A DNA stretch of 64,000 nucleotides from Macrostomum lignano (GCA_002269645.1 NIVC01000894.1:62001-126000); one strand, 5' to 3'; positions 1,904 through 62,773 are shown, counted from the first letter of the stretch. Notes: generated by a model not told the origin, from the letters alone. Translations and numbers: made by a program.

Positions 1904-3566
1904 CTAAAAAGCCCTCCTGAGATCGAGACTGACTTTATAAGCGAGCTGGTCAACCTTCTGCGGTACGACGTGGTACAGTTTGTTATCGATCTGGACTGGC
2001 TCCTTCTGCAGGTGCCGGTTCACCTTGGTCATGATGTAGCCGAGATCGTGCCGCTTGAAATCTGTTTCAATATAACTGCACAGAGTCTGCACAAATACGG
2101 AGCCTTCGGCGGTGTCTCGGAACGCCACTGAGCCCGGGGTGTTGGCGAAGCAGAGCAGGAAGTCTCCTTCGGCGGGGTGGATGGCCGGGTCGAGCACTGG
2201 GGCTGGCGGCTCATCAGTTCTCATAGTGGAGTATTCGACTGCCGATGCAGCATTTCGGCAGGCTGGCGCAGAAAGCTTGTCAGTTTTCATTCTTGAGCTC
2301 CGACTACCGATTCTGTTGCCGCGGCAGGCCTGGATGAAGAAAATCTTTGGCTTCCCAGCCAGACTTTTGCAGACGGAGGCCTGAGAAGGTATGGTTGAGC
2401 ATAGGCTAAGATTGCTTGAACAAAATATGTTTTTAAAAAAGCAGACCAGAGCAAAAGTAAATTTAACGGCATCTCAGCAAGTGGAAGCTTCTTTGACTCA
2501 TGCCACCAATGGTCTAGAGCATGTAGAACACTGTACATGTACCATCATCAGCCGAGAGGTCCGTCGATGAAAGAGACAATGCATATGTGCACCAGCTGTG
2601 TGGAATTCTGGGTTTGGCTGCGTGCTCAAATGTCGGGCAAGATCATTCTTCCAATTGCTAATAACAAGGAGTTCAGACAGAATGGTCAATGCTAACCTGA
2701 AACCTCTCGGTTAGTTTACGGATCTCATACGGGACGCCGTCGCTGCCGTAGATACAGTCGTGGCTGCCGTGAGCCATAAAAAAGCAAACAAAGCTGCCGT
2801 GTCTGGCCAGCTCTTTCGATCGCTTCACCTCGCTGAGAAAGTCGTCGATCTCCTCGGCAGTGAGGTCCTCCTGCTTTTTGACGCGGAATTGGAGCTTCCC
2901 AAAGAGTTCGGTCACTCGATCTACATCCCGCTGGGAACCTTCGCGCTCCTCGTGGCTGACTGTGATATCGCTAGTAGCCGTGTACTTGTTGATGTTGACA
3001 ATGATGCAGAATCCTTGAGGATTGGTCACTTTATAGTAGTCCTCGTCTAGCCTAAAATACGAGTACGAAGGAAATCATTCAGTAAACACTCAGAGAGTTT
3101 CAGAGAGAAGATTCTGAGATTACCATATTGACGGTCCTCCACTTTTTCGAGAGACTCCGGTGGCACCTTGTGGATACAGGTCTGTACTCCGGCTGCTAAA
3201 ATAATATTTATCATAAATTTTATCAACTTTCTATTCTAAAGACGAAAAATACGAGACTTGTTCAAAATTTGTGTAAAAAACATACTAATTTTCCTGTTCC
3301 TCGTAATTTGATAGCTCATCCACATCGTCAACCTGTGTTCTTGTTCTTCGGGTCGAATAATTACTAGAAGATTGGCTAGTGGACCGTGTAGTGCCGCTAA
3401 GCTTTGCTTCCACTTCCAAATTGTGACTTGCAACACCAGTGGCTCTTTTAGAAGACATTTCTTCCACTTCCAAATTGAGACTTGCAACACCAGTGGCTCT
3501 TTTAGAAGACATTTCTTTCACTTCCAAATTGAGACTTGCAACACCAGTGGCTCTTTTAGAAGACAT
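1904..3566 (-). CDS. Caspase paralogue A (peptidase C14), ~394 aa; exons 3566-3286, 3195-3124, 3051-2697, 2380-1904; 5' start uncertain
   Basis: GT-AG joins are phase-consistent (total 1185 nt). Motifs: GFCIIVNINKY, REGSQRD, catalytic MAHG, LAGKPKIFFIQACRG (QACRG at 2318-2332), small subunit GDFLLCFANTPGSVAFRD..GSVFVQTLC. Confidence 0.92.
3405..3566 (-). repeat. Three 54-bp coding tandem repeats (MSSKRATGVAS[L/H]NLEV[K/E][E/A]) in the caspase A prodomain
   Basis: ATGs at 3566, 3512 and 3458 start near-identical 18-aa units. Confidence 0.9.
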
Positions 3567-5829: not shown

Positions 5830-6925
5830 CTAGTTGGCCCTGCTGGGATCAAAGCTGACCCGGCGTGCCAGCTGGTCCACCTTCTGCGTCACAATAGACT
5901 GCAACTTGCCATCGCCGGTCTCAACAGAATTCTTCTGCAGGAAGTTGTTCACTTTGGTCATGATGTGCGACACGTCGTGCACCTTGTAGTGCTGCTGCAT
6001 GAAGCGGCAAAGAATCTGCACAAATGGCGAGCCCCTGTGGGTGTCTCTTATGGCGACGGAGCCCGGTGTGCTGGCGAAACACCGCAGAAAGTCGCCTTCG
6101 GCCGGACATAAGTCTCGGTTTCTCAGAGGAGCAAGTGCGGCTGCGTCGAAGGTCACGCTGGACTCTCCAGCTTCTTGAGTGGAGCGAGTCTGGCCTTGTC
6201 CCATGGCTGGGACTCGGTCGGAGCGAATGGTGGAGCGTGCAGCGGCTAAAGTGTTGGTGCGACAGGCTTGAATGAAGAAGATTTTCGGTTTCCTGGACAG
6301 AGCCTGGCAGAAGTAGGACTGAAACAGCGAATTCGTGAAAATTAGTTTGCAGATTTTTCCCTAGAGTAACAAATTACACATTTTTTGCGATTGTGTAGCG
6401 TCCCTCAACCCGCTTAAGACCACCCAGATACTCAGAAAAGTACAATACAAATAATTACCATTGACGACAATAAGACTGGTAGACTAATTAGCGTAGTTTT
6501 TGTCAATAAAAATCTGCATTTTTAAATTACCTGAAATTTATCAACGATCCTATCGATGGGATAAGGAACCCAATCGGCTCCGTAGATGCAGTCGTGGCTG
6601 CCGTGAGCCATTAAAAAGCAGACAAAACTGCCGTGCTTGTTGAGCTCCTCTGATCTCTTTACGTCATTGAGATAGTCGTCGATCTCCTGAGTTTTGAGGT
6701 CTTCCCGAACTTTGACAATGAAACGAAGCTCCTCGAATACTTGTCTCACTAGCTGCACATCCTTCGCCGATCCTTCACGTATCTCTGGATCGATGTTGGC
6801 TGTGCCTCCCTCCTTGTGCTTTAACTCTTCGTATTTGCCAATGTTGATGATGATGCAGAATCCCTGCGGGTTCGTAACTGGGTAGAACTCCTCTTCGCTC
6901 CTGGAATTGGGCATAGCGATTGAAA
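5830..6925 (-). CDS. Caspase paralogue B catalytic exons (6925-6531, 6318-5830), QACRT active site
   Basis: GFCIIINIGKY, REGSAKD, FLMAHGSHDCIYG; phase-0 join KFQ|SYFCQALSRKPKIFFIQACRT (QACRT at 6256-6270); GDFLRCFASTPGSVAIRD..GSPFVQILC. Closely similar to paralogue A. Confidence 0.92.
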
Positions 6926-7094
6926 CTGAATTATATATTACCAAACCCGAGAAATTCTCTCCAACCTTATATATTTTTCTATATTTTATTATTTATATAC
7001 CTAATAGTTTTTTAAAGGTAAAATACGCTCGTAATTTCGTGGGTTCATATAATTTATTCACGAGAAAAGCTGCTTTCACAGATTTAAAAGTTTA

Positions 7095-7235
7095 TAGTCT
7101 ATGGGCTTCCTCTCAGGTCTATGGGCTTCCTCAGATCTATGGGCTTCCTCTCAGGTCTATGGGCTTCCATAGCGTCAGATCTATGGACTTCATTAGATCA
7201 TTGGCCTTCCTCGGGTCTATGGACTTCCTCAGATT
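7095..7235. repeat. ~18-20 bp intronic minisatellite (TCTATGGGCTTCCTCAG[G/A])
   Basis: About 6-7 degenerate units. Confidence 0.8.
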
Positions 7236-7363
7236 CATAGTCTTTTTAAGCCAATAAAAGAACACTAAGCCTAACTTAGACCTTATTTCTAGTCTCTGAC
7301 GATGTCTCAAATAAAAAATCCCAATAGTACATTTAAGCAAGCAAGCGAGACCTCGTGGCTTAC

Positions 7364-8270
7364 CAGTTCGTCTGTCTAGTCGTAGCACCGCTTTGAGAGC
7401 CTGTTGACGGCTGAACTTCCGGAAATTCCGCTCTTTCAGGCGACCTGAAATTGATTAAATCAGATTAAATTCAAGTACTAACTATACTCGTTAACCTGTT
7501 GCTTTTTATCAATTTTTAGCTTTCTGAATCTAGAAATAGGTCGCATAAATCTATAAAACCAGAGTGTCCTTCACTGGTCCAACTCTCAATCTGCAGTAGT
7601 ATGACTTGCCAGCTCTCATCTTCGTCCCAGATGTCGTCTGTCTGAGCTCCTCGCCGCGTTTTCCATCTACAAGGATGAGAGCATTGTTCTAAACAATCCG
7701 CCTATACTGAAAATTACTAGTACGAGCAATAAGTACAAGACAAATATCAATCAACACATACGGCAGATTCGGAGTCTCATCAAAGAATTTTTTCGATTGG
7801 TACCTGAAACAGGCAAGCGAAAAGGTAATTGTTACTGATGCACATTTAGATTTTGTCAAGCAGTTTTGCAGTTGGACAATATGAGCCAAGTACAAAATCA
7901 ACTCTTTGATAACCTTTTTTTCGATGGGAAATGTACTAAAACATCCGAAAGTCCTAAAATATACTCAGCAACATAGCAAAGTCGCCACTCGGGTAGCTTT
8001 AATCCGTCCAACCCTCGCACACCGCTTCCCCCCACTTCATTCCTCAACTCAAGTCTGCCGTGGCGTAGCTGAGTTGCGTCACTCGCAAATATTGAGAGAC
8101 TTTACCAGCGCTTTCACAAGTAGCGATCACAGACGGAATCTTCTGTGATGGCGACTTTTCGATGTTGCAGGTCATGCGAGCTATATTGAACTTGATTGTT
8201 ATTTTAATATCTTCCCGTGTCACTTCCATCAGCAAGTGAAGTCAAGGGCAACTTACGCTCGTAGAAACAC
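7364..8270 (-). CDS. Six small linker exons (8270-8257, 8180-8106, 7953-7914, 7803-7762, 7666-7560, 7444-7364) joining the ankyrin exons to caspase B
   Basis: All are bounded by AG/GT with consistent phases (2-1-1-2-2-1-1) and read without a stop: PCFYEPRMTCNIEKSPSQKIPSVIATCESAGLSDVLVHFPSKKRYQSKKFFDETPNLPWKTRRGAQTDDIWDEDESWQVILLQIESWTSEGHSGRLKERNFRKFSRQQALKAVLRLDRRT|VSIAMP. The model needs a 14-nt microexon, two weak donors, and skipping of a strong upstream AG near 7708. Confidence 0.55.
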
Positions 8271-8318
8271 CTTCAGAGCAAATTACTTGCCCATAAAGAG
8301 CGGTAAATGTAAACTCAC

Positions 8319-10319
8319 GGTTGCAGTAAGTCGGTCAGATCCTCCTTATCATATTCGAGGGCAATTTCATAGGCAGTGCAGCCACGGGAGTCTTTCAGAC
8401 TCCAATCGGCGCCTCCAGCCAACAGGAACCACCCTGTCAAGAAGGCTCTTCGAATGGGCGTGTTGGAGGCTGCCGCGATCAGGGGAGTCTCGCCGTTGTC
8501 CTTTGTGGCATTGGCGGCGGCTCCTGCATTTAGCAGTGCGACAATCGCCGAGTCGTTTCCTGTCTCGGCTGCGTGATGCACACAGGTATTGGCATTTATG
8601 TCGGCGCAGGTTGGGTCAGTCAGGTTCAGCAGCTGCTTCCAAACGGACGCGTTTTCAATTTCGACGCTCCGAACTAGATGCATCAGCATGGTGTGACCGG
8701 CTCTGCTAGGCAGATCGCAGTTGGCGCGCGTCACCAGCCGCAGCAGCGTCGCCACGTTGCCCTCCCGGGCCAGGCACTCCAGCTTCTCTCTGTCGGCCTC
8801 TTCCTGCAGCGATTAGTTAACAGGAAATCGACGTTAAGTAGATCAGGAGGTTTCTTCTCAACTCTCTTTTCTCCTCTCTCCCCATCTTCTCCCTCATCTA
8901 TTATCTCATTTCCTCTCTCATCTAGACCGCAGCTAGGTTCTTTATCTGGCCCTTCCTTGAGGTAAAAAAGTTTGCCGATCCCTTAAGTAGTAGATGCATT
9001 GCCACATGGTAAATAAGAGACACGCACCAGCGAACGAGGCTTACCTGCTTCGTCAGACCGTTGATTAACCCAATCGCGACCACATCCAGACGCATCTCGC
9101 TGCAGAAAAAATCCAAAAAATCTCGTGTTATACGCTCGTATTGACAAAACCAGCTATTCTTGAGAATGATATTCTGTAAAGCCAGAAAGTAAAGCAGGGC
9201 AGATTACACACCAGACTCACTCACCGTTCTATATAGCTGGCCAGCTCTGAGTAGCCCTTGAATTACGCCAGCTCCAGCGCCGTCTGACCATTTTGGTCCT
9301 TCATTCCAAAAAACTTCTGCCTCATCGGGTTTCGACTCATATCGCCAGTGTAGCTGGCCTTTAGAAACCTGCCTAGTTGTCGTGCTGTACTGACGCCTCT
9401 GTATTCGTCTATGAACCTCTCCTGCCTCAGCAGGTGCAGCAGGTGCTTGGCGCATTTCCAGCTGCCAAAAAGCACCGCCTCCATCAGCGGAGTGCGTCCC
9501 CACTCGTTCTGCAGCCACTTCGCCTCGAAAGGCAGCAGCGCCAGCACTCGCACGTGGTCCCGGCGGGCTGCCAGGTGAGCAGCCGTGTTGCCCTCTGCGT
9601 CAGATGCTTTCGGATCCGCGCCGAGCTCAAACAAGTACAAGATGCACTTTTCAGCTTGCAAAGGAGTTCCACGAGTGTCGGCCACTAGCATCAAAACGGT
9701 GCGTCCACTTCCATCTTTTGACTTTACTAACCGGCGCATCGCCAGCTGTCGCACTTGTCCGAAGTCGCCTTGAATGACAAGCTTAGCGAGTCGCTGCAAG
9801 GCTGCTGACTCATCAACCGTGTCAGATTTTGCCTAAGAATAAAGTTTAAGATTCAAAGCGAAAGAATGATACGTTCTAAAAAGAGCTTCGCCTGTCGACC
9901 CTCAAGCGTCATTGTACCTGTACTAACGATCCTCAAGCGGCATTGTACCTGTACTAACGATCCTCAAGCGGCATTGTACCTCTACTAACGATCCTCAAGC
10001 GGCATTGTACCTGTACTAACGATCCTCAAGCGGCATTGTACCTGTGCTAACGATCCTCAAGCGGCATTGTACCTGTGCTAACGATCCTCAAGCGGCATTG
10101 TACCTGTACTAACGATTCTCAAGCGGCATTGTACCTGTACTAACGATCCTCAAGCGGGATTGTGCCTGTACTAACGATCTTCAAACGGCAATATGTCTGT
10201 AATAACGATTCTCAAATAGCATTATACCTTTAATACATCCTGACTATTGTAAAGGACTGGTACTTAGACGTGCTTCATAAGCTTCTTACCTGGGAATTTA
10301 CTGAGCTACCAGAGCCCAT
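8319..10319 (-). CDS. Ankyrin-repeat region with N-myristoylation motif; exons 10319-10290, 9832-9267, 9099-9045, 8803-8319
   Basis: Starts MGSGSSVNSQ (MGxxxS). About 8 ANK-like motifs (GRTVLMLVA, GNTAAHLAA, GRTPLMEAV, GQTALELA, GHTMLMHLV, NTCVHHAA, GETPLIAAA, GCTAYEIA). Phase-consistent GT-AG joins. The last exon ends at donor CC|GTGAGT rather than at a stop. Confidence 0.88.
9899..10205. repeat. 31-bp intronic minisatellite (CCTCAAGCGGCATTGTACCTGTACTAACGAT)
   Basis: About 9-10 units, decaying at the right end. Confidence 0.92.
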
Positions 10320-11757
10320 TATCGTTTGGAAACAAGCGGATTTTTTCGAGAGGAAAAATGGAACTGCTATTGCCTGGTGTTGAGCTGAGAGCGGAGGCTT
10401 TTGACTGCTCTAGCTTTTATAGACTCTATTGTATATGTCTAGTATGAGAAACACGCAGTCTTAAACAATCTCATGATGCTACTGAACTGCGGTAGTGTAG
10501 TGCGCACATAATCAGGCGCTTGTAACTATTGCTGTTGTAGTTGGCCTAATCGTGTTGAAGATGTCTGTGTTATCTACGAGCTACATGTACGTACTTAGCA
10601 TCCGCTTGTCTTTTTATGTGGTAAATTCTTAGATAGGACTAGATTGGAATTGATTTTCCGATACAGACAATTTAAGTCTATAGACAAAAAAGAGTGTTTG
10701 TTTGAATTGAAGCTGACGTTTTAGGCTGTAGGAGGACCAGAAGCAGTAGATATAGGTTGGAAAGGTCGATTAGATGGACCAGCCCGGTGTGACTTGCCGT
10801 GACTTCTATGCCCAAAGATCGACGTCCGTCGGCGCCAAAATCTCATCGTTGTTGCAAAACAAGACGGTCTGGACCAGCGCCCTCTGGTGGTTTGGCAGCG
10901 CCTCAGACTGCAGGACCGCTCTCATAGAGTGAAGGGCAACCCTGCAAGCAACGCCGCAGATTCTTTCAGAGATCAGGTAGGCTGTCCTGACGGAGGTAGA
11001 ATTCACACGTTCTCCACAAGAATCCACACGAATCCACGACTCCACAAACGTAAGGACAGACGCTTTAGGCTAGTAATAATGTTCGAGGAGGGCTGTAGGG
11101 TGTCTTTATGGGTGTAAATCGCACGACAGTTAAGAAGAGTTAAGGATAGGCAGCCAAATACTCAGCAATATTGAATTCATTCGAAGTCACTTCCCTGCGA
11201 AACCATCGTTCTACAGTGATTCTTTCCCACGATCCCAAAAGACAATGAAAATGTATTTTATATACGCTACTAGTAGTAAAATATTCGTTTTTTAAGTTGT
11301 CGGCAAAGCAACAATCAGCATGCTTAGATTAACGAGGTTGCTTCAAACTAGCAACAATTGCAGGTATGCAGGCGCAGTGGGGCGTAAATGTAAATAAGGG
11401 GGAGTGGGCCGGAAAAGTTGAGCAGCTCTGCACATTGCTCTGCTTTAACGTGCTTCTTTTGTCGCAGCGCTGCCAGCCAGGCCCAGTCGAGGTCTGAGAC
11501 ACTCAAGATAGGCAAATTAGGTGGACTGGACAATAAGAGAAGAATTTTGAAATTTATACTGCAACAACTTTCTGCATCTGGGCCAGAGCACAATAAAGTC
11601 TATATTATTTAGATTCTTCGCTTCATTCAAGCATCTACCTTTAGGCAGTCCAATTTTAGCTGATATTGAATGGGTCAAGGTAAAGAAATCTTTGTCATAA
11701 AAGCGTAAACTCTCAAAGCAGTGAAAGAGATTCTGCTGTCAAGACTCGGATTAGAAG

Positions 11758-13535
11758 ATGGTGAAGCCACCTTTGACAAACTCTGTTAGAGTTTTCAGCA
11801 GATTTAAACTATTTCTTTTGATTTTCTTCATCGTTCATATCGCGCAACCGGTGGCATGTGAGCTGGAGTACTCCACTCCTGTCCCGACTCCCGTCAAGCA
11901 CCATGCCACCGGGAAGCAGCGAGAGCAACTGCTCCAGCTGAAAAGCATCGTTACCAGTGCTTTGAGATCATCGTCGACAAGCCGCATCAACGGATCTACG
12001 GAATCAGCCATCGACAGTGCGTCGCCAATTGAAACGAAGTCACGGGGCAAGACTACATCGAAACCGAAGTACTGGTGGATTTCCAAGCCATTCTTCATCG
12101 CCAGCATCTCCGCCGGATGCGCGTCGCTTGTCGTCCTGGTGCTTCTGTGCATCGTCTGCACGCCGCTGTGCAACAGCGTCGACTGCCCATGTCGGAAAGG
12201 ATTTTCATCCGGTGGCAAGGCCGACTTGGGAGACGGCTCGTCCGATGGCGGCTCGCTCTGCCAGGAGGCCGCCATCGCTGACTGCCCCTCGCCCTACGGT
12301 GTCATCCGGTACCTGATGACCTACAACCAGGATATTGAAGAACTCACCGTGCTTGTGAAAGGCTGCACAGATCTGCCTAGAAACATATCGGGCACGCTCA
12401 ACCCTTATATTCTGGTCCGGATTGTGAGCAAGGACGGGGCCGGCGCTGCCCTGAGCGAGACGGAGGCAATCGCCACGCCTGTGGAGCGCGGCACAACCAG
12501 TCCGGAGTTCAACTATCCCTGCAGCTTCAAGCTGGCCAAGGCCGACCTCACCAAGGCCGCGGTGAAGTTCGAAGTTTACGACCGCGACGAAGTGTCCAAG
12601 GAGCCGGCGCTCCTGGCCCGGTGCCGGCACAATCTGGAGGATCGGCGCTGCGGAAATGAGATCGACGACCTGCTGATCAACACTGCGACGGATGAGAAGC
12701 ACGTGTTCCGCCGCAGGCTGAAGCGCGGCTTGGCGGCAGACTGCGGCCCAGGCGAAATCTGCGTGCTGCTGCGTCGGGGCGGCGCTGATGAAGCGCCGTT
12801 GATGGTACGAGTTATCGAGTGCAAAGGTGTGAAGAACTTTGGCACTGGCCCAGAAAGTATATGGAGTAGAAACTTTAAGCCAGAGACAACTCGAGCCTGA
12901 ACACACTAAACTCCCATTTTCTAGACTAAATTGCGACCCTAATCCCCTATAGCTGCGATAGGAGCTTTGCAGAATGTAGCTTTTACCCTGTTTAGGCAAT
13001 GTGACCTAGTTAAGTAGCCTGAGTCATTCTATGCAGCAGAAAGTTTATTAAATTGCTGAATAAACCTACAGGTGTTCACCTGAAACAGTCCGACGGACAG
13101 TTGGACAAGCACAACCTGCCCAACACCTTCGTTGAGCTGATGCTGATGGAGCCGAACGGACCGATCCACGTCAAACGGAGCGACACTGTGGATAAGAGCC
13201 GCAACCCCTACTTTAACGAGGAGTTCAGCTTCCCAGCCATGCCAGCTGATCGACTTCGGCACTGCGCCCTCCGGCTCAGCCTGGTGCACGTCAGCGACTT
13301 CCTGCGCAGTAAGCAAGCGGTCGGCTCGGTTGAGCTTTCAGCCGATGATGACGGAGCGAGTGGCGAGAGCGATCGGCGCTTCCGACTAGCTCGGGAACAC
13401 TGGCTGAGCATCACCGAGTCGAAGGCGCAGCAGCAGCAGCAGGCGGTGTCGAAGTGCTGCTGGCACAGTCTGGTGGCTCCCGACGAGGAGATGCATCTGC
13501 GACGTGCGCGAGCGATGAACGCAGCGAGGAAGTAG
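11758..13535 (+). CDS. Synaptotagmin-like protein (TM + C2A + C2B); exons 11758-12856 and 13072-13535
   Basis: TM FFIASISAGCASLVVLVLLCIVC followed by a Cys cluster; C2A (YGVIRYLMTY..LTVLVKGCTDL..NPYILV..PEFN..KFEVYDRD); C2B (GEICVLL..VRVIECKGV..NTFVEL..NPYFNEEFSF); C-terminal WHSL motif; phase-1 join GAA A|GT. Confidence 0.85.
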
Positions 13536-14218: not shown

Positions 14219-17933
<3,715 letters not shown>

Positions 17934-22300: not shown

Positions 22301-25300
22301 TGTGACGGCAAACAGTCTTGCAAATTGCAGTCCAGCAATTCCGTGTTTGGTGATCCTTGCCCCGGCACCTACAAGTACATGCTGGTCAGGCACTCATGCC
22401 AGATGACTGACGCCAAGCTGAAAGCGGTTCGCGCCGCCGTGGACGCCAGATACCGCAGCACTGTCGCACGCCTTGGCAAGCAACACCTGGCTAAGGTAAA
22501 GAGTTTCACTGCCCAGCTCAACTTGGCCACTGCAAGGCACAAAGCTTGCGTTATTAAGCGAAGACGGGCCCGAAGCTTCACCCGGCAGCTGCAGCTGAAC
22601 ACCGAAAGCCTGCGACGACGGCTGGTTTGGATTACGGCGGCTCTGAAACGAAGGCGCCTAAGAGCAAGGCGAAGAGAAGCCCAGTGCGCCAAGGAGAAGA
22701 AATTGCAGAACGAAATCGTGAGGCGCAGTGTTCGGTTGCTAATCAAACGTCGCAATAACAAACCTTTAAAGTCGGGAAAAGAGATCCAGAAGCTAAAGAG
22801 ACTGCTTATAAAGCGGCGACAAATGCGACGAAGAGCGGCAAAAAGACGCCAGAGAAAGGCCGCGACGAGACGCAGGAGGATTGCGAGAAGAAACAAAAGA
22901 CGCCAGAGAAAGGCACCGAAAAAGAACAGGAGACAGAGACAGACCTCAAAAAAGAGCAGAAGACGCCAGAGAAGAAGCAGACTCGCAATCCGACGACGCA
23001 GACGAGCAGCAAAGAGACGCGCTGCAATCCGAAGACGCAGACTGGATATCCAAAGACGTAGACGCGCGGCAAAGAGACGCGCAGCAATCCGAAAACGTAG
23101 ACTGGCGATCCGAAGACGCAGACTCGCAATCCGACGACGTAAGCGCGCTGCCAAGAGACGCGCTGCAATCCGAAGACGCAGACCCGCGGCAAAGAAACGC
23201 GCTGCAATCCGACGACGCAGACTGGCAATCCGAAGACGCAGACGCGCTGCGAAGAGACGCGCAGCGAAGAGACGCGCTGCAATCCGAAGACGCAGACGCG
23301 CTGCCAAGAGACGCGCAGCGAAGAGACGCGCTGCAATCCGAAGACGCAGACGCGCTGCCAAGAGACGCGCAGCGAAGAGACGCGCTGCAATCCGAAGACG
23401 CAGACTGGCAATCCGAAGACGCAGACGCGCTGCCAAGAGACGAGCAGCAAAGAGACGCGCGGCAAAGGGACGTCCTGCAATCCGAAGACGCAGACTCGCA
23501 ATCCGAAGACGCAGACGCGCTGCCAAGAGACGCGCAGCGAAGAGACGCGCTGCAATCCGAAGACGCAGACTGGCAATCCGAAGACGCAGACGCGCTGCCA
23601 AGAGACGAGCAGCAAAGAGACGCGCGGCAAAGGGACGTCCTGCAATCCGAAGACGCAGACTCGCAATCCGAAGACGCAGACGCGCTGCCAAGAGACGCGC
23701 AGCGAAGAGACGCGCTGCAATCCGAAGACGCAGACTGGCAATCCGAAGACGCAGACGCGCTGCCAAGAGACGAGCAGCAAAGAGACGCGCGGCAAAGGGA
23801 CGTCCTGCAATCCGAAGACGCAGACTCGCAATCCGAAGACGCAGACGCGCTGCCAAAAGACGCGCAGCGAAGAGACGCGCTGCAATCCGAAGACGCAGAC
23901 TGGCAATCCGAAGACGCAGACGCGCTGCCAAGAGACGAGCAGCAAAGAGACGCGTGGCAAAGGGACGTCCTGCAATCCGAAGACGCAGACTCGCAATCCG
24001 AAGACGCAGACGCGCTGCCAAGAGACGCGCAGCGAAGAGACGCGCTGCAATCCGAAGACGCAGACTGGCAATCCGAAGACGCAGACGCGCTGCCAAGAGA
24101 CGAGCAGCAAAGAGACGCGCGGCAAAGGGACGTCCTGCAATCCGAAGACGCAGACTCGCAATCCGAAGACGCAAACTGGCAATCCGAAGACGTAAACTGG
24201 CAATCCGAAGACGAAGACGCGCGGCAAAGAGACGCGCTGCCAAGAGACGCGCAGCAAAGAGACGCGCAGTAAAGAGACGTCTTGCAATCCGAAGACGCAG
24301 ACGCGCTGCCAAGAGAAGCGCAGCAAAGAGACGCGCTGCAATCCGAAGACGCAGACTCGCAATCCGACGACGCAGACTGGCTATTCGAAAACGCAGACTC
24401 GCAATCCGACGACGCAAACTGGCAATCCGAAGACGTAGGCGCGCTGCCAAGAGACGCGCTGCAATCCGAAGACGCAGACTCGCAATCCAACGACGCAAAC
24501 TGGCAATCCGAAGACGCAGACGCGCTGCCAAGAGACGCGCAGCAAAGAGACGCGCTGCAAAGAGACGTGCTGCAATCCGAAGACGCAGACTCGCAATCCG
24601 ACGACGCAAACTGGCAATCCGAAGACGCAGACTGGCTATTCGAAAACGCAGACTCGCAATCCGACGACGCAAACTGGCAATCCGAAGACGAAGACGCGCG
24701 GCAAAGAGACGCGCTGCCAAGAGACGCGCAGCAAAGAGACGCGCAGTAAAGAGACGTCTTGCAATCCGAAGACGCAGACGCGCTGCCAAGAGACGCGCAG
24801 CAAAGAGACGCGCTGCAATCCGAAGACGCAGACTCGCAATCCGACGACGCAGACTGGCTATTCGAAAACGCAGACTCGCAATCCGACGACGCAAACTGGC
24901 AATCCGAAGACGTAGGCGCGCTGCCAAGAGACGCGCTGCAATCCGAAGACGCAGACTCGCAATCCAACGACGCAAACTGGCAATCCGAAGACGCAGACGC
25001 GCTGCCAAGAGACGCGCAGCAAAGAGACGCGCTGCAAAGAGACGTGCTGCAATCCGAAGACGCAGACTCGCAATCCGACGACGCAAACTGGCAATCCGAA
25101 GACGTAGGCGCGCTGCAAAGAGACGCGCAGCAAAGAGACGCGCTGCCAAGAGACGCGCAGCAAAGAGACGCGCAGTAAAGAGACGTCTTGCAATCCGAAG
25201 ACGCAGACGCGCTGCCAAGAGAAGCGCAGCAAAGAGACGCGCTGCAATCCGAAGACGCAGACTCGCAATCCGACGACGCAGACTGGCTATTCGAAAACGC

Positions 25301-28300
25301 AGACTCGCAATCCGACGACGCAAACTGGCAATCCGAAGACGTAGGCGCGCTGCCAAGAGACGCGCTGCAATCCGAAGACGCAGACTCGCAATCCAACGAC
25401 GCAAACTGGCAATCCGAAGACGCAGACGCGCTGCCAAGAGACGCGCAGCAAAGAGACGCGCTGCAAAGAGACGTGCTGCAATCCGAAGACGCAGACTCGC
25501 AATCCGACGACGCAAACTGGCAATCCGAAGACGTAGGCGCGCTGCAAAGAGACGCGCAGCAAAGAGACGCGCGGCAAAGAGACGCGCTGCCAAGAGACGC
25601 GCTGCAAAGAGACGCGCTGCCAAGAGACGCGCGGCAATCCGTAGACGCAAACTAGCAATTCGACGACGCAAACTAGCAATCCGACGACGCAAACTAGCAA
25701 TCCGAAGACGTAGGCGCGCTGCAAAGAGACGCGCAGCAAAGAGACGCGCTGCAAAGAGACGCGCTGCAATCCGAAGACGCAGACTCGCAATCCGACGACG
25801 CAAACTGGCAATCCGAAGACGTAGGCGCGCTGCAAAGAGACGCGCAGCAAAGAGACGCGCGGCAAAGAGACGCGCTGCCAAGAGACGCGCTGCAAAGAGA
25901 CGCGCTGCCAAGAGACGCGCGGCAATCCGTAGACGCAAACTAGCAATCCGACGACGCAAACTAGCAATCCGAAGACGTAGGCGCGCTGCAAAGAGACGCG
26001 CTGCCAAGAGACGCGCTGCAAAGAGACGCGCTGCAAAGAGACGTGCTGCAATCCGAAGACGCAGACTCGCAATCCGACGACGCAAACTGGCAATTCGAAG
26101 ACGTAGGCGCGCTGCAAAGAGACGCGCAGCAAAGAGACGCGTGGCAAAGAGACGCGCTGCAAAGAGACGCGCTGCAAAGAGACGCGCTGCCAAGAGACGC
26201 GCGGCAATCCGTAGACGCAGACTCGCAATCCGAAGACGCAGACTGGCAATTCGAAAACGCAGACTGGCAATCCGAAGACGCAGACTGGCAATCCGAAGAC
26301 GCAGAATGGCTATTCGAAAACGCAGACTCGCAATCCGACGACGCAAACTGGCAATCCGAAGACGCAGACGCGCTGCCAAGAGACGCGCTGCCCAGAGACG
26401 CGCTGCAAAGAGACGCGCGGTAATCCGTAGACGCAGACTCCAAATCCGAAGACGCAGACGCGCTGCAAAGAGACGCGCTGCCAAGAGACGCGCTGCCAAG
26501 AGACGCGCTGCAAAGAGACGCGCTGCAATCCGAAGACGAAGACTCGCAATCCGAAGACGCAGACGCGCTGCCAAGAGACGAGCAGCAAAGAGACGCGCAG
26601 CAAAGAGACGCGCGGCAAAGAGACGCGCTGCCAAGAGACGCGCTGCAAAGAGACGCGCTGCCAAGAGACGCGCGGCAATCCGTAGACGCAGACTCCAAAT
26701 CCGAAGACGAAGACGCACTGCAAAGAGACGCGCTGCCAAGAGAGGCGCTGCCAAGAGACGCGCTGCAAAGAGACGCGCTGCAATCCGAAGACGCAGACTC
26801 GCAATCCGACGACGCAAACTGGCAATCCGAAGACGTAGGCGCGCTGCAAAGAGACGCGCAGCAAAGAGACGCGCGGCAAAGAAACGCGCTGCCAAGAGAC
26901 GCGCTGCAAAGAGACGCGCTGCCAAGAGACGCGCGGCAATCCGTAGACGCAAACTAGCAATCCGACGACGCAAACTAGCAATCCGAAGACGAAGACGCGC
27001 TGCAAAGAGACGCGCTGCCAAGAGACGCGCTGCAAAGAGACGCGTTGCAAAGAGACGCGCTGCCAAGAGACGCGCGGCAATCCGTAGACGCAAACTAGCA
27101 ATCCGAAGACGCAGACGCGCTGCCAAGAGACGCGCTGCAAAGAGACGCGCTGCAATCCGAAGACGCAGACTCGCAATCCGACGACGCAAACTGGCAATTC
27201 GAAGACGTAGGCGCGCTGCAAAGAGACGCGCAGCAAAGAGACGCGTGGCAAAGAGACGCGCTGCACAGAGACGCGCTGCAAAGAGACGCGCTGCCAAGAG
27301 ACGCGCGGCAATCCGTAGACGCAGACTCGCAATCCGAAGACGCAGACTGGCAATTCGAAAACGCAGACTGGCAATCCGAAGACGCAGACTGGCAATCCGA
27401 AGACGCAGAATGGCTATTCGAAAACGCAGACTCGCAATCCGACGACGCAAACTGGCAATCCGAAGACGCAGACGCGCTGCCAAGAGACGCGCTGCAAAGA
27501 GACGCGCTGCAAAGAGACGCGCTGCAATCCGAAGACGCAGACTCGCAATCCGACGACGCAAACTGGCAATCCGAAGACGCAGGCGCGCTGCCAAGAGACG
27601 CGCTGCAAAGAGACGCGCTGCAAAGAGACGCGCTGCAATCCGAAGACGCAGACTCGCAATCCGAAGACGCAGACTCGCAATCCGACGACGCAAACTGGCA
27701 ATCCGAAGACGTAGGCGCGCAGCCAAGAGACGCGCTGCCAAGAGACGCGCTTCCAAAAGACGCGCTGCCAAGAGACGCGCTGCAAAGAGACGCGCTGCCA
27801 AAAGACGCGCGGTAATCCGTAGACGCAGACTCCAAACCCGAAGACGAAGACGCGCTGCAAAGAGACGCGCTGCAAAGAGACGCGCTGATAAGAGACGCGC
27901 TGCAAAGAGACGCGCTGCAATCCGAAGACGCAGACTCGCAATCCGGAGACGCAGACGCGCTGCCAAGAGACGCGCAGCAAAGAGACGCGTGGCAAAGAGA
28001 CGCGCTGCAAAGAGACGCGCTGCAAAGAGACGCGCAGCAAAGAGACGCGCTGCTAAGAGACGCGCTGCAAAGAGACGCGCTGCCAAGAGACGCGCGGCAA
28101 TCCGTAGACGCAAACTAGCAATCCGAAGACGCAAACTGGCAATCCGAAGACGCAGACTCGCAATCCGACGACGCAAACTGGCAATCCGAAGACGTAGGCG
28201 CGCTGCAAAGAGACGCGCTGCAAAGAGACGCGCTGCCAAGAGACGCGCGGCAATCCGTAGACGCAAACTAGCAATCCGAAGACGCAGACGCGCTGCCAAG

Positions 28301-31300
28301 AGACGCGCTGCAAAGAGACGCGCTGCAATCCGAAGACGCAGACTCGCAATCCGAAGACGCAGACGCGCTTCCAAGAGACGCGCAGCAAAGAGACGCGCTG
28401 CAAAGAGACGCGCTGCAATCCAAAGACGCAGACTCGCAATCCGACGACGCAAACTGGCAATCCGAAGACGTAGGCGCGCTGCAAAGAGACGCGCTGCAAA
28501 GAGACGCGCTGCCAAGAGACGCGCGGCAATCCGTAGACGCAAACTAGCAATCCGAAGACGCAGACGCGCTGCTAAGAGACGCGCTGCAAAGAGACGCGCT
28601 GCAATCCGAAGACGCAGACTCGCAATCCGACGACGCAAACTTGCAATCCGAAGACGTAGGCGCGCTGCAAAGAGACGCGCTGCAAAGAGACGCGCTGCCA
28701 AGAGACGCGCAGCAATCCGTAGACGCAAACTGGCAATCCGAAAACGCAGACGCGCTGCAAAGAGACGCGCTGCCAAGAGACGCGCTGCCAAGAGACGCGC
28801 TGCAATCAGAAGACGCAGACTCGCAATCCGAAGACGCAGACTGGCAATTCGAAAACGCAGACTGGCAATCCGAAGACGCAGACTGGCTATTCGAAAACGC
28901 AGACTCGCAATCCGACGACGCAAACTGGCAATCCGAAGACGCAGACGCGCTGCCAAGAGACGCGCTGCCAAGAGACGCGCTGCAAAGAGACGTGCTGCAA
29001 TCCGAAGACGCAGACTCGCAATCCGACGACGCAAACTGGCAATCCGAAGACGTAGGCGCGCTGCAAAGAGACGCGCAGCAAAGAGACGCGCGGCAAAGAG
29101 ACGCGCTGCCAAGAGACGCGCTGCAAAGAGACGCGCTGCCAAGAGACGCGCGGCAATCCGTAGACGCAGACTCCAAATCCGAAGACGAAGACGCGCTGCA
29201 AAGAGACGCGCTGCCAAGAGACGCGCTGCAAAGAGACGCGTTGCAAAGAGACGCGCTGCCAAGAGACGCGCGGCAATCCGTAGACGCAAACTAGCAATCC
29301 GAAGACGCAGACGCGCTGCCAAGAGACGCGCTGCAAAGAGACGCGCTGCAATCCGAAGACGCAGACTCGCAATCCGACGACGCAAACTGGCAATCCGAAG
29401 ACGTAGGCGCGCTGCAAAGAGACGCGCTGCAAAGAGACGCGCTGCCAAGAGACGCGCAGCAATCCGTAGACGCAAACTGGCAATCCAAAAACGCAGACGC
29501 GCTGCAAAGAGACGCGCTGCAAAGAGACGCGCTGCAATCCGAAGACGAAGACTCGCAATCCGAAGACGCAGACGCGCTGCCAAGAGACGCGCAGCAAAGA
29601 GACGCGCGGCTAAGAGACGCGCTGCAATCCGAAGACGCAGACTCGCAATCCGACGACGCAAACTGGCAATCCGAAGACGCAGACGCGCTGCCAAGAGACG
29701 CGCAGCAAAGAGACGCGCTGCAAAGAGACGTGCTGCAATCCGAAGACGCAGACTCGCAATCCGAAGACGCAGACGCGCTTCCAAGAGACGCGCAGCAAAG
29801 AGACGCGCGGCAAAGAGACGCGCGGCAAAGAGACGCGCGGCAAAGAGACGCGCTGCAAAGAGACGCGCTGCAATCCGAAGACGCAGACTCGCAATCCGAA
29901 GACGCAGACGCGCTTCCAAGAGACGCGCAGCAAAGAGACGCGCGGCTAAGAGACGCGCTGCAATCCGAAGACGCAAATTGGCAATCCGAAGACGTAGGCG
30001 CGCAGCCAAGAGACGCGCTGCCAAGAGACGCGCTGCCAAGAGACGCGCTGCCAAGAGACGAGCTGCAAAGAGACGCGCTGCCAAGAGACGCACGGTAATC
30101 CGTAGACGCAGACTCGAAATCCGACGACGCAAACTGGCAATCCAAAGACGTAGGCGCGCTGCAAAGAGACGCGCAGCAAAGAGACGCGCTGCAAAGAGAC
30201 GTGCTGCAATCCGAAGACGCAGACTCGCAATCCGACGACGCAAACTGGCAATCCGAAGACGTAGGCGCGCTGCAAAGAGACGCGCAGCAAAGAGACGCGC
30301 AGCAAAGAGACGCGCTGCAAAGAGACGCGCTGCCAAGAGACGCGCTGCAAAGAGACGCGCTGCCAAGAGACGCGCTGCAATCCGAAGACGCAGACTCGCA
30401 ATCCGAAGACGCAGACTGGCAATTCGAAAACGCAGACTGGCAATCCGAAGACGCAGACTGGCTATTCGAAAACGCAGACTCGCAATCCGACGACGCAAAC
30501 TGGCAATCCGAAGACGCAGACGCGCTGCCAAGAGACGCGCTGCCAAGAGACGCGCTGCAAAGAGACGCGCTGCAATCCGAAGACGCAGACTCGCAATCCG
30601 ACGACGCAAACTGGCAATTCGAAGACGTAGGCGCTCTGCAAAGAGACGCGCAGCAAAGAGACGCGCAGCAAAGAGACGCGCGGCAATCCGTAGACGCAGA
30701 CTCCAAATCCGAAGACGCAGACTGGCAATTCGAAAACGCAGACTGGCAATCCGAAGACGCAGACTGGCAATCCGAAGACGCAGAATGGCTATTCGAAAAC
30801 GCAGACTCGCAATCCGACGACGCAAACTGGCAATCCGAAGACGTAGGCGCGCTGCAAAGAGACGCGCAGCAAAAAGACGCGCGGCAAAGACACGCGCTGC
30901 CAAGAGACACGCTGCAAAGAGACGCGCTGCCAAGAGACGCGCGGCAATCCGAAGACGAAGACGCGCTGCCAAGAGACGCGCTGCCAAGAGACGCGCAGCA
31001 AAGAGACGTGCTGCAAAGAGACGTGCTGCAATCCGAAGACGCAGACTCGCAATCCGACGACGCAAACTGGCAATCCGAAGACGTAGGCGCGCTGCAAAGA
31101 GACGCGCTGCCAAAAGACGCGCAGCAAAGAGACGCGCTGCAAAGAGACGCGCTGCTAAGAGACGCGCTGCCAAAAGACGCGCGGCAATCCGTAGACGCAA
31201 ACTAGCAATCCGAAGACGCAAACTGGCAATCCGTAGACGCAAACTGGCAATCCGAAGACGCAAACTGGCAATCCGAAGAATTAGGCGCGCTGCCAAGAGA

Positions 31301-47908: not shown

Positions 47909-62773
<14,865 letters not shown>

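What the first reader, a model, noticed from the sequence alone, without database searches (positions are those of the whole stretch)
5830..10319. Putative myristoylated ankyrin-repeat-caspase fusion (~792 aa)
Seen: the ankyrin exons end at a splice donor (8319), not a stop. Six small GT-AG exons fill the 1.4-kb gap in consistent phases and run into the caspase B exon at 6925; the 12 exons total 2,379 nt = 793 codons. The product would be MGSGSS (myristoylation consensus) + ~8 ANK repeats + linker + caspase p20/p10. Established: metazoan initiator caspases normally use CARD or DED prodomains. Inference: a membrane-anchored caspase recruited or gated by an ANK sensor, possibly an immune or cell-death sensor-effector. 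Weak points are a 14-nt microexon, two weak donors and a skipped strong acceptor near 7708.
Basis: partly seen in the sequence, partly recalled or inferred. Interest (0 to 1): 0.85.

Follow-up and report, generated by a model that had tools for sequence, protein, structure and literature searches.

The report
Flatworm ankyrin-caspase gene, truncated copy
This is a real, already annotated gene of the flatworm Macrostomum lignano that joins an ankyrin-repeat domain to a caspase protease, but it has 9 exons rather than 12, and this copy carries an early stop codon that separates the predicted membrane anchor from the protease.

Summary
The window is 100% identical to Macrostomum lignano assembly Mlig_3_7, contig NIVC01000894.1. 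The finding is gene BOX15_Mlig009377g4 on the minus strand.

The ankyrin-caspase fusion is real. A 9-exon model (10319-5830, 738 codons) reproduces GenBank protein PAA75242.1 exactly from Met215. The GenBank annotation derives from an RNA-seq-guided transcriptome. Full-length sister copies g1 and g3, and more distant paralogues, show the same join.

- Junctions 8319, 7762>7666, 9832 and 6318 are correct.
- There are three linker exons (42, 57 and 81 nt, one with a GC donor), not six.
- The caspase acceptor is 6900, not 6925.
- Billions of frame-consistent six-exon chains cross the gap by chance.

This copy has TAA at codon 200 (9265-9263), where g1 and g3 have AAA. The annotated CDS therefore starts at Met215, and MGSGSS is uncoupled from the caspase here.

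Ankyrin-prodomain caspases are already published for parasitic flatworms. This family sits in a separate, M. lignano-only caspase clade. Its ankyrin module is also fused to MAP3K-like kinases at the same exon boundary.

Function is inferred, not shown. Interest is moderate.

The parts
10290..10319 (-). Exon 1: ATG (10319-10317) plus 9 codons, MGSGSSVNSQ. It has a strong Kozak context (A at -3, G at +4) and a putative N-myristoylation motif (Gly2, Ser6). Donor CAG|GTAAGA.
   Evidence: Identical in copies g1 and g3. P0010 and P0086 begin with the same peptide.
9225..9832 (-). Exon 2 (608 nt): first ANK block. It ends at the strong donor ACG|GTGAGT.
   Evidence: Pfam Ank_2 E 2.9e-14. 99% identical to P0010 residues 33-235. 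The equivalent exon is 581 nt in P0023 and P0011.
9263..9265 (-). Premature stop TAA at codon 200, inside a conserved ANK helix (ALELA*FKGYSELASYIE). Copies g1 and g3 have AAA (Lys).
   Evidence: Paralogues have Arg or Lys at this column.
9045..9099 (-). Exon 3 (55 nt), EMRLDVVAIGLINGLTKQ. It contains ATG 9095-9093 (Met215), the annotated CDS start of PAA75242.1.
   Evidence: The gene range L002 10001-13266 maps to window 9095-5830.
8319..8803 (-). Exon 4 (485 nt): second ANK block. It ends in phase 2 at CC|GTGAGT, and an in-frame TGA (8317-8315) overlaps the donor.
   Evidence: Pfam Ank_2 E 1.5e-14..
7762..7803 (-). Exon 5 (42 nt, phase 2-2): YQSKKFFDETPNL. This is the conserved cap motif of the ANK module, Y-[DEQ]-[GS]-K-x-[YF]-F-[DN]-E.
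   Evidence: A 42-nt exon at the same position occurs in ANK-kinase P0023 and ANK-caspase P0011. The motif is aligned.
7610..7666 (-). Exon 6 (57 nt, phase 2-2): WKTRRGAQTDDIWDEDESW. It is an acidic linker exon with a GC donor (CTG|GCAAGT). UniProt models P0086 and P0087 skip it.
7364..7444 (-). Exon 7 (81 nt, phase 2-2): SPERAEFPEVQPSTGSQSGATTRQTNW. This linker is predicted disordered.
   Evidence: AF2 pLDDT is below 50 over P0010 residues 432-474.
6531..6900 (-). Exon 8 (370 nt): N-terminal half of the caspase domain. It carries the S1 Arg494 (6779-6777) and the catalytic His552 (6605-6603, motif MAHGS). The acceptor is TTCCAG|G.
5830..6318 (-). Exon 9 (489 nt): catalytic Cys595 (6264-6262, motif QACRT), the intersubunit loop, the p10-like part with Arg667, and stop TAG 5832-5830.

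Best explanation
Shown:
- Window 10319-5830 (minus strand) is Macrostomum lignano gene BOX15_Mlig009377g4. It is one of four ~97-98% identical copies of a lineage-specific ankyrin-prodomain caspase gene in this redundant (hidden polyploid) genome.
- The intact gene (copies g1 and g3) has 9 exons and encodes 738 aa. In order: an MGSGSS N-terminus; a two-block ANK solenoid of about 390 aa; a linker of about 60 aa encoded by three symmetric phase-2 micro-exons; and a caspase-3/7-like protease domain.
- The protease domain keeps the His-Cys dyad and the Arg/Gln/Arg S1 pocket.
- In the window's copy a single A>T change turns Lys200 into TAA. The only long CDS left is the annotated 524-aa frame from Met215.

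Inferred:
- Translation from the strong first AUG would stop after a 199-aa ANK fragment, and the mRNA would be a target for nonsense-mediated decay. This copy therefore probably makes little or no full-length enzyme, and g1 and g3 carry the function.
- In the intact protein the N-terminal glycine is myristoylated and holds the proenzyme at a membrane.
- The ANK module is a protein-binding platform. When it engages a still unknown partner, it concentrates or dimerises the protease (induced proximity). Cleavage at Asp sites then follows in the disordered linker (DDIWDEDE) and in the intersubunit loop (IRSD, VTFD).
- The same ANK module, through the conserved 42-nt exon, is joined to a MAP3K-like kinase in paralogues. 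This suggests one recognition module wired by exon shuffling to alternative effectors.
For: Identity of the locus:
- 8,501 nt of the window are 100% identical to L002, which is NIVC01000894.1.
- The 9-exon model contains P0084 (PAA75242.1) as an exact 524-aa substring. It differs from P0010 (copy g1) at only 8 of 738 positions, including *200K.

Basis of the annotation:
- The GenBank annotation of Mlig_3_7 comes from a genome-guided RNA-seq transcriptome (StringTie, TACO and TBONE). That pipeline cuts transcription units at trans-splice and poly(A) sites. The genome has 180 Mb of blocks duplicated at 95% identity or more (PMC5730564).

The fusion is seen independently:
- Copies g1 and g3 (P0010 and P0083, 760 aa 'partial') carry it.
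- So do paralogues P0011, P0012, P0013, P0018, P0027, P0046 and P0004.
- Copies g1 and g3 are 97-98% identical to the window across exons and introns.

Exon structure:
- All three linker exons are phase 2-2, and the GC donor is conserved in g1, g3 and g4.
- The exon structure is identical through the 42-nt exon in ANK-kinase P0023 (L004) and ANK-caspase P0011 (L005).

Protease domain:
- Pfam Peptidase_C14 E 1.5e-41.
- Best solved relatives are caspase-3 and caspase-7, with His, Cys and the S1 residues aligned.
- The AF2 model of copy g1 has mean pLDDT 80.6. It shows a confident ANK solenoid and caspase fold and a disordered linker.
- Foldseek matches caspase-7/-3 at TM 0.85-0.88 and DARPin-DARPin fusions for the ANK part.

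Stop codon: T at 9265 is unique to g4.

Other:
- The kinase partner is MEKK2/ASK1-like.
- The MGxxxS N-terminus recurs in P0012 and P0013.
Against: - No reads or junction counts could be inspected here. With four near-identical copies, RNA-seq support cannot be assigned to g4 specifically.
- The TAA could be a consensus error or a polymorphism of the assembly.
- An in-frame ATG at 6914 with an open frame upstream, and the TGA overlapping the 8319 donor, leave room for separate ANK-only and caspase-only isoforms.
- Older UniProt models skip exon 6 (P0086, P0087) or all linker exons in paralogues (P0004, P0027), so the isoform mix is unknown.
- Myristoylation, membrane localisation, protease activity, the activation mode and any binding partner are all untested.
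- The ANK domain could equally act as an intramolecular inhibitor.
Confidence: 0.78

Rival explanations
1. One reading: a 12-exon, ~792-aa myristoylated ANK-caspase. It uses the 9267 donor, six small GT-AG linker exons (including ones near 8270 and 8180 and a 14-nt microexon) and the 6925 acceptor.
For: It shares several true junctions with the annotated model: 8319, 7762>7666, 9832 and 6318. The reading frame can be kept open.
Against: - No annotated protein or homologue contains sequence from 8318-7804 or from 6925-6901.
- The annotated 9-exon model matches GenBank exactly.
- About 2.4e9 alternative six-exon chains exist by chance.
- The 9267 GT is absent from the intact copies.
- The model misses the GC-AG intron.
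Confidence: 0.03
2. Two separate products are the main output. One is an ANK-only protein ending at the TGA that overlaps the 8319 donor. The other is a short-prodomain caspase starting at ATG 6914 (MPNSRSEEEF...), made from an internal promoter or a trans-spliced downstream cistron.
For: - TGA 8317-8315 is in frame if the intron is retained.
- ATG 6914 is in frame, with an open frame back to 6992.
- M. lignano trans-splices about 39% of its genes and has polycistronic precursors (PMC5730564).
- ANK-only paralogues exist (P0015, P0025).
Against: - The TBONE pipeline, which cuts at trans-splice and poly(A) sites, left ANK and caspase in one gene in copies g1, g3 and g4.
- Several divergent paralogues keep the same join and the same phases.
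- The linker exons are conserved in size and phase.
Confidence: 0.07
3. This copy is rescued. The A>T change that creates TAA also creates a 5' splice site (GGC|GTAATT, exon end 9267) in the same phase as the normal donor. Splicing there removes 42 nt with the stop and yields a 724-aa myristoylated fusion lacking 14 residues of one ANK repeat.
For: Model A is fully open, at 664 aa without the linker exons and 724 aa with them. Both donors are in phase 2, 42 nt apart.
Against: - The new site matches only 3 of 7 non-GT consensus positions. The normal donor ACG|GTGAGT, 42 nt downstream, matches 6 of 7.
- The deletion would remove the second helix of a conserved ANK repeat.
- GenBank did not annotate this form.
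Confidence: 0.08
4. The TAA is an assembly or consensus error or a rare somatic or strain variant, and g4 encodes the same full-length 738-aa protein as g1 and g3.
For: Mlig_3_7 is a long-read assembly of a highly redundant genome. Copy g2 (P0085) shows a frameshift in the caspase that could also be an error.
Against: - The difference is a substitution, not the indel type typical of long-read errors.
- g4 also carries about 20 other exonic substitutions relative to g1 and g3, so it is a distinct, diverging copy.
Confidence: 0.1

Closest known systems
Its own annotated copies and paralogues in Macrostomum lignano: BOX15_Mlig009377g1-g4; Mlig016858, Mlig007583, Mlig006631, Mlig000705
   Same: - Same gene. 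PAA75242.1 is encoded exactly by the window.
- g1 and g3 are 97-98% identical in DNA and give the intact 738-aa protein.
- The paralogues share the ANK module, the 42-nt exon, a variable linker and the caspase domain at 40-50% identity.
   Different: - g4 has the premature TAA.
- g2 has a frameshift in the caspase.
- Mlig016858 has QAGRG, so the catalytic Cys is lost.
- All are named only 'hypothetical protein' or 'ANK_REP_REGION domain-containing protein'. No paper in the searchable library mentions Mlig009377.
[quoted passage not shown]
   Same: - N-terminal ankyrin repeats in place of CARD or DED, followed by a long low-complexity linker and a C-terminal caspase domain.
- Flatworm-specific.
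- Proposed to act as initiators through ANK-mediated protein interaction.
   Different: - In an NJ tree of caspase domains, the neodermatan ANK caspases group (93%) with another M. lignano protein, Mlig019067. The window groups (100%) in a M. lignano-only clade.
- Identity to the S. mansoni caspase domain is only 26%.
- The ANK module is unrelated beyond the repeat itself.
- The paper states ANK caspases are restricted to parasitic species, whereas this is a free-living species.
M. lignano ANK-MAP3K-like kinases (for example BOX15_Mlig017273g1, Mlig013011g1, Mlig015152g1)
   Same: - Same ~400-aa ANK module, 50-58% identical to the window's.
- Same exon structure through the 42-nt 'YDGKIYFDEP' exon.
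- One member lies on the same 416-kb contig.
   Different: - The effector is a STE-group kinase domain (best PDB matches MEKK2 and ASK1) instead of a caspase.
- The N-termini (MAQR..., MAEQ...) lack the Gly2 myristoylation motif.
Executioner caspases-3/-7 and long-prodomain CARD/DED caspases
   Same: - Caspase fold, with TM 0.85-0.88 to caspase-7/-3.
- His-Cys dyad, QACRx pentapeptide and S1 Arg/Gln/Arg.
- Overall logic of an N-terminal interaction module plus a C-terminal zymogen, as in caspase-8 and caspase-9.
   Different: - No death-fold domain is present.
- The prodomain is a ~390-aa ANK solenoid with a lipidation motif.
- The pentapeptide is QACRT, not QACRG.
Caiap (CARD + 16 ANK adaptor of fish inflammasomes, PMC5662874) and caspase-binding DARPins
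   Same: ANK repeats bind a caspase directly. In Caiap they stabilise active caspase-1-like Caspa in large complexes. DARPins are cited in PMC11463336 as specific caspase binders.
   Different: There the ANK domain acts in trans on a separate caspase. Here ANK and caspase are in one polypeptide. No sequence relationship was tested.

Membership tests
Caspases (MEROPS C14A / Pfam Peptidase_C14) | Significant match to the family profile over p20 and p10 | tested here: met
   PF00656 E 1.5e-41, 143 bits against a cut-off of 21.4, residues 18-259 of the 290-aa caspase part.
Caspases (MEROPS C14A / Pfam Peptidase_C14) | Catalytic His-Cys dyad and Asp-binding S1 residues (Arg, Gln, Arg) | tested here: met
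   The alignment to caspase-3 matches MAHGS to SHGEE, QACRT to QACRG, iREGS to sRSGT and aiRD to swRN. Window coordinates are His 6605-6603 and Cys 6264-6262.
Caspases (MEROPS C14A / Pfam Peptidase_C14) | Caspase/haemoglobinase fold | tested here: met
   AF2 model of the near-identical copy g1. Foldseek matches procaspase-7, caspase-7 and caspase-3 at TMt 0.85-0.88.
Caspases (MEROPS C14A / Pfam Peptidase_C14) | Asp-specific endopeptidase activity | not testable with these tools
   Needs recombinant enzyme and peptide substrates.
Platyhelminth ANK caspases sensu PMC11463336 | Ankyrin repeats as the N-terminal pro-domain of a caspase | tested here: met
   Pfam ANK families in exons 2 and 4. They are joined in frame to the caspase in the annotated model.
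Platyhelminth ANK caspases sensu PMC11463336 | Caspase domain belongs to the monophyletic ANK-caspase clade (sister to DED caspases) | tested here: not met
   NJ tree with 252 columns and 200 bootstraps. Schistosoma, Trichobilharzia and Taenia group with Mlig019067 at 93%. The window sits in a separate M. lignano-only clade at 100%. The method is rough and the deep nodes are unsupported.
Platyhelminth ANK caspases sensu PMC11463336 | Restricted to parasitic flatworms | tested here: not met
   The window is from free-living M. lignano.
CARD/DED initiator caspases | Death-fold (CARD or DED) pro-domain | tested here: not met
   No CARD or DED hit in Pfam for any exon block. The AF2 N-terminal region is an ANK solenoid.
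N-myristoylated proteins | Met-Gly start with a small, uncharged residue at position 3 and Ser/Thr at position 6 | tested here: met
   MGSGSSV at 10319. The motif is also present in P0012 (MGSAASS) and P0013 (MGSWFSK). The consensus is recalled from general knowledge; no predictor was run.
   The modification itself is not testable here. In this copy the MGSGSS frame ends at TAA codon 200, upstream of the caspase, so the coupling fails unless the weak 9267 donor is used.
BOX15_Mlig009377g4 (GenBank PAA75242.1) | Identical genomic sequence and identical encoded protein | tested here: met
   100% identity over 8,501 nt to NIVC01000894.1. The 524-aa protein is an exact substring of the window model.

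The most novel reading that the evidence does not exclude
Macrostomum has evolved its own modular sensor-effector family. One conserved ~400-aa ANK recognition module, ending in the 42-nt 'YxGKxYFxE' exon, has been wired by phase-2 exon shuffling to one of three outputs: a caspase (with a myristoyl membrane anchor), a MAP3K-like kinase, or nothing. It has expanded to dozens of loci. In this reading the ANK-caspases would be membrane-tethered death or immune effectors triggered directly by ligand binding to the ANK module. That would be an activation route independent of death-fold adaptors, and separate from the neodermatan ANK caspases. Combined with Mlig019067, it would also overturn the published view that ANK caspases are an adaptation to parasitism.
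Probability: 0.2. Interest if true: 0.7.

Novelty: new variant of a known kind. Interest (0 to 1): 0.4.

Why it matters
Caspases are normally recruited through death-fold domains. A family that uses an ankyrin solenoid, probably lipid-anchored, shows another way to couple recognition to proteolysis. The same module is plugged onto a MAP3K-like kinase in sister genes.

M. lignano is transgenic and RNAi-tractable, so the idea is testable.

The data also correct a published generalisation. A free-living flatworm has ANK caspases of at least two unrelated lineages, one of them related to the schistosome and tapeworm type.

For genome annotation, the case shows two things:
- Ab initio chaining of micro-exons is unreliable, since billions of valid chains exist.
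- Redundant copies in this genome carry disabling mutations.

Tried and rejected
- **Direct-splice model.** My first model spliced 8319 directly to 6900 (6 exons, 664 aa, fully open). It fitted older UniProt paralogue models (P0004, P0027). I replaced it with the 9-exon model once P0010 and P0084 showed three linker exons. It remains possible as a minor isoform, because all linker exons are phase 2-2.
- **Exon versus intron divergence among g1, g3 and g4.** Exons differ by about 1% and introns by 2.5-6% including indels, but the copies are too similar to tell 40-80-nt exons from intron.
- **Bacterial promoter/terminator scan of the upstream region.** Not meaningful for a eukaryote.
- **Supplementary tables of PMC11463336.** Not held, so I could not see which M. 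lignano sequences that study used.
- **Full-text search for 'Mlig009377'.** No papers.
- **Transcript-derived (Logan) proteins identical to the fusion.** None found. The only Logan relative is a 205-aa caspase fragment at 35% identity, from run SRR31628394, organism not given.
- **Exhaustive HMMER search with copy g1.** No close relative of this ANK module outside M. lignano. Distant hits are generic ANK proteins or generic caspases.
- **Alternative genetic code to explain the TAA.** Rejected, because the sister copies have AAA and all other stops behave normally.

Full report
**What is in the sequence**

On the minus strand between 10319 and 5830 there are clear coding blocks:
- a 30-nt first exon, ATG GGC TCT GGT AGC TCA... 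(MGSGSSVNSQ);
- two large ankyrin-repeat blocks (Pfam Ank_2 E 2.9e-14 and 1.5e-14);
- a two-exon caspase domain (Peptidase_C14 E 1.5e-41).

The observation of ANK exons followed by a caspase on the same strand is therefore real.

**Where the window comes from**

- A search with the caspase part found only Macrostomum lignano proteins. Several of them had ANK joined directly to the caspase.
- A search with the ANK-to-caspase query found P0010, 'hypothetical protein BOX15_Mlig009377g1, partial' (760 aa, ANK + Peptidase_C14). It covers 100% of the query.
- Its 90% cluster holds four GenBank copies (g1-g4) and two UniProt models.
- The contig carrying g4 (NIVC01000894.1, 416 kb, assembly GCA_002269645.1 = Mlig_3_7) is 100% identical to the window over the 8,501 nt compared.
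- The g1 and g3 loci are 97-98% identical, introns included.

**The gene model**

I used the P0010 and P0084 sequences to place exons. This gave a 9-exon model with GT-AG introns throughout, except one GC-AG intron after exon 6:

| Exon | Window coordinates | Note |
|---|---|---|
| 1 | 10319-10290 | start codon |
| 2 | 9832-9225 | first ANK block |
| 3 | 9099-9045 | contains Met215 |
| 4 | 8803-8319 | second ANK block |
| 5 | 7803-7762 | linker, 42 nt |
| 6 | 7666-7610 | linker, 57 nt, GC donor |
| 7 | 7444-7364 | linker, 81 nt |
| 8 | 6900-6531 | caspase |
| 9 | 6318-5830 | caspase and stop |

- The model is 2,217 nt, or 738 codons plus the stop.
- It contains GenBank PAA75242.1 (P0084, 524 aa) as an exact substring starting at Met215.
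- It differs from copy g1 at 8 of 738 positions.
- The annotated gene range of g4 (L002 10001-13266) maps to window 9095-5830. That is from the ATG of Met215 to the TAG.
- The GenBank annotation of Mlig_3_7 is the 'coregenes' subset of a genome-guided RNA-seq transcriptome. It was built with StringTie and TACO, and TBONE cuts units at trans-splice and poly(A) sites. The junctions therefore rest on transcript data rather than ab initio prediction (PMC5730564). I could not inspect reads myself, and reads cannot be assigned among four near-identical copies.

Correct:
- the donor after 8319, although an in-frame TGA at 8317-8315 overlaps it;
- the 7762>7666 junction, which skips the acceptor near 7708;
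- the 9832 and 6318 acceptors.

Wrong:
- six linker exons instead of three;
- exons near 8270 and 8180 and a 14-nt microexon, none of which appears in any annotated protein or homologue;
- the acceptor at 6925 instead of 6900;
- the totals of 12 exons and 793 codons.

The exon 7666-7610 ends at a GC donor (GAGCTG|GCAAGT), conserved in g1, g3 and g4. A GT-AG-only reading could not recover it.

As a control for chance, I counted all frame-consistent GT-AG exon chains from the 8319 donor to either acceptor. There are about 2.4e9 six-exon chains in the real sequence and 0.6-3.9e9 in shuffled versions. 'Six small exons in consistent phases' carries no evidential weight.

**The premature stop**

- Exon 2 of this copy has TAA at codon 200 (9265-9263). 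It lies within a conserved ANK helix (ALELA*FKGYSELASYIE).
- g1 and g3 read AAA (Lys), and paralogues have Arg or Lys there.
- That donor is weak, matching 3 of 7 consensus positions. The normal ACG|GTGAGT donor 42 nt downstream matches 6 of 7.
- The first AUG has a strong context (A at -3, G at +4).
- The expected product of g4 is therefore a 199-aa ANK fragment from an mRNA prone to nonsense-mediated decay. It is neither a myristoylated ANK-caspase nor, probably, the annotated 524-aa protein. This step is inference.
- Copy g2 (P0085) has a frameshift in the caspase. Two of four copies thus look disabled, which is plausible in a genome with 180 Mb of duplicated blocks. Assembly error cannot be excluded.

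**Anatomy of the intact protein**

An AlphaFold2 model of copy g1, built with a 30-sequence family alignment, has mean pLDDT 80.6. It shows:
- a disordered N-terminus;
- a disordered segment at P0010 residues 432-474, corresponding to the linker exons;
- a confident caspase fold;
- a disordered intersubunit loop.

Foldseek finds DARPin-DARPin fusions for the ANK part and procaspase-7, caspase-7 and caspase-3 (TM 0.85-0.88) for the protease.

By sequence, the best solved relatives are caspase-3 and caspase-7 (E 2e-27). The catalytic His (MAHGS), Cys (QACRT) and the S1 Arg/Gln/Arg all align.

The linker and the intersubunit loop contain Asp sites (DDIWDEDE, IRSD, VTFD) that could serve for processing. 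This is inference.

**The family**

- Both homology searches and an exhaustive HMMER scan of 1.84 billion representatives found this specific ANK module only in M. lignano.
- It occurs in four forms: joined to a caspase (Mlig009377, 016858, 007583, 006631, 000705); joined to a protein kinase (at least 10 clusters); with an N-terminal SH3; and alone.
- The kinase is STE-group and MAP3K-like, with best matches MEKK2 and ASK1.
- Exon mapping compared an ANK-kinase (P0023, on the same contig, L004) with an ANK-caspase paralogue (P0011, L005). Their structure is identical through a 42-nt exon encoding Y-[DE]-G-K-x-Y-F-[DN]-E-P. After that exon the kinase or the caspase exons follow.
- In the window, exons 5, 6 and 7 are all phase 2-2. 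The ANK module ends in phase 2 and the caspase begins in phase 2. This geometry favours exon shuffling and frame-preserving exon skipping.
- UniProt models do skip exon 6 (P0086, P0087) or all linker exons in paralogues (P0004, P0027).
- MGxxxS N-termini occur in three ANK-caspase subfamilies but not in the ANK-kinases.

**Comparison with the literature**

[quoted passage not shown] According to that paper:
- they were first noted in Schistosoma;
- they are monophyletic and sister to DED caspases;
- for M. lignano, only a caspase with a kinase-like pro-domain is mentioned.

My results differ:
- A search with another M. lignano ANK-caspase, Mlig019067 (P0223), retrieved the Schistosoma, Trichobilharzia and Taenia ANK + C14 proteins and DED caspase-8 as nearest relatives.
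- In a rough NJ tree of caspase domains (252 columns, 200 bootstraps), the neodermatan ANK caspases group with Mlig019067 at 93%.
- In the same tree the window's caspase sits in a 100%-supported M. lignano-only clade. That clade also holds the other ANK-module caspases, a second ANK type (P0006) and a Ras/Roc-caspase (P0116).

So the architecture is a known kind. This family fails the clade criterion and looks like an independent fusion. Separately, M. lignano also has a relative of the published clade.

**Mechanism**

Shown:
- one reading frame links an ANK solenoid, a disordered linker and a catalytically complete caspase domain in the intact copies;
- the N-terminus fits the myristoylation consensus;
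- the ANK module is shared with MAP3K-like kinases.

Inferred:
- the protein is membrane-tethered through myristate;
- the ANK module binds a partner and concentrates or dimerises the zymogen (induced proximity, as for CARD/DED caspases), or alternatively masks it until a ligand binds;
- Asp-directed processing follows.

ANK domains binding caspases in trans (Caiap, PMC5662874; DARPins cited) make either mode plausible. Nothing here tests an immune role.

**Verdict**

- The finding is a real but already annotated gene of an already described architectural class.
- In this copy the headline claim (myristoyl anchor + ANK + caspase in one protein) is broken by a nonsense codon.
- What remains interesting is the M. 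lignano-specific modular ANK family (caspase or MAP3K-like effector) and the conflict with the 'parasite-restricted' claim.
- Interest 0.4.

Noticed in passing
window 1907-3053 (minus strand): A second caspase lies directly downstream, in two exons (3053-2676 and 2383-1907). It is 94-99% identical to the C-terminal half of UniProt model P0087. At the g1 locus (L001 10283-10594) this downstream gene has its own ANK exon. That exon is missing in the window and at the g3 locus, so here it looks like a caspase-only remnant of a tandem ANK-caspase pair.
   Followed up: partly
window 11758-13535 (plus strand): A C2-domain gene (510 aa in the NCBI annotation; ORFs 11758-12900 and 13053-13535) is transcribed divergently. 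Its ATG lies about 1.4 kb from the ANK-caspase ATG. A TATAAAAG lies about 100 nt upstream of the caspase-gene ATG, near 10420.
   Followed up: partly
window 22971-31745: A tandem array of about 9 kb built on a 15-nt unit (AGACGCGCTGCAAAG) with higher-order periods of 90-330 nt. It has a strong AT skew (0.59) and GC 0.59. The UniProt ML2 model P0088 (2,968 aa) translates its minus strand and runs on through neighbouring genes into the ANK-caspase, so that model is probably chimeric.
   Followed up: partly
window 39194-43453; also 16226-17670, 52000-53318, 56459-57558, 60756-62550: Large simple and tandem repeats: (AGAGAGG)n of 4.3 kb with GC skew near 1, (TAGA)n of 1.4 kb, and several 16-23-nt satellites. 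This fits the repeat-rich M. lignano genome.
   Followed up: no
window 9896-10229 (intron 1) and about 7100-7250 (intron 7): A 31-nt tandem repeat (10.8 copies) in intron 1 and a ~20-nt GGAAGCCCATAGACCTGA-type repeat in intron 7. Both vary in copy number among g1, g3 and g4 and account for most intron alignment gaps.
   Followed up: partly
P0223 (BOX15_Mlig019067g1-g4), not in the window: M. lignano has a 599-aa ANK + caspase protein. Its nearest relatives are the Schistosoma, Trichobilharzia and Taenia ANK caspases and DED caspase-8, and it groups with the neodermatan ANK caspases at 93% bootstrap. This contradicts the statement in PMC11463336 that free-living flatworms lack ANK caspases.
   Followed up: partly
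P0011 / P0004 (BOX15_Mlig016858g2; locus L005): The closest distinct paralogue has QAGRG instead of QACRG. The catalytic cysteine is replaced, so it is probably a pseudo-caspase.
   Followed up: no
L004 (NIVC01000894.1 235843-245034) and other M. lignano loci: The same ANK module is fused to a MAP3K-like (MEKK2/ASK1-like) kinase in at least 10 protein clusters. The exon structure is identical through the 42-nt exon. A Ras/Roc-caspase (P0116) also falls in the same caspase clade. The 'kinase-like pro-domain caspase' reported for M. lignano in PMC11463336 might be a run-on model of neighbouring family members; this is speculation.
   Followed up: partly
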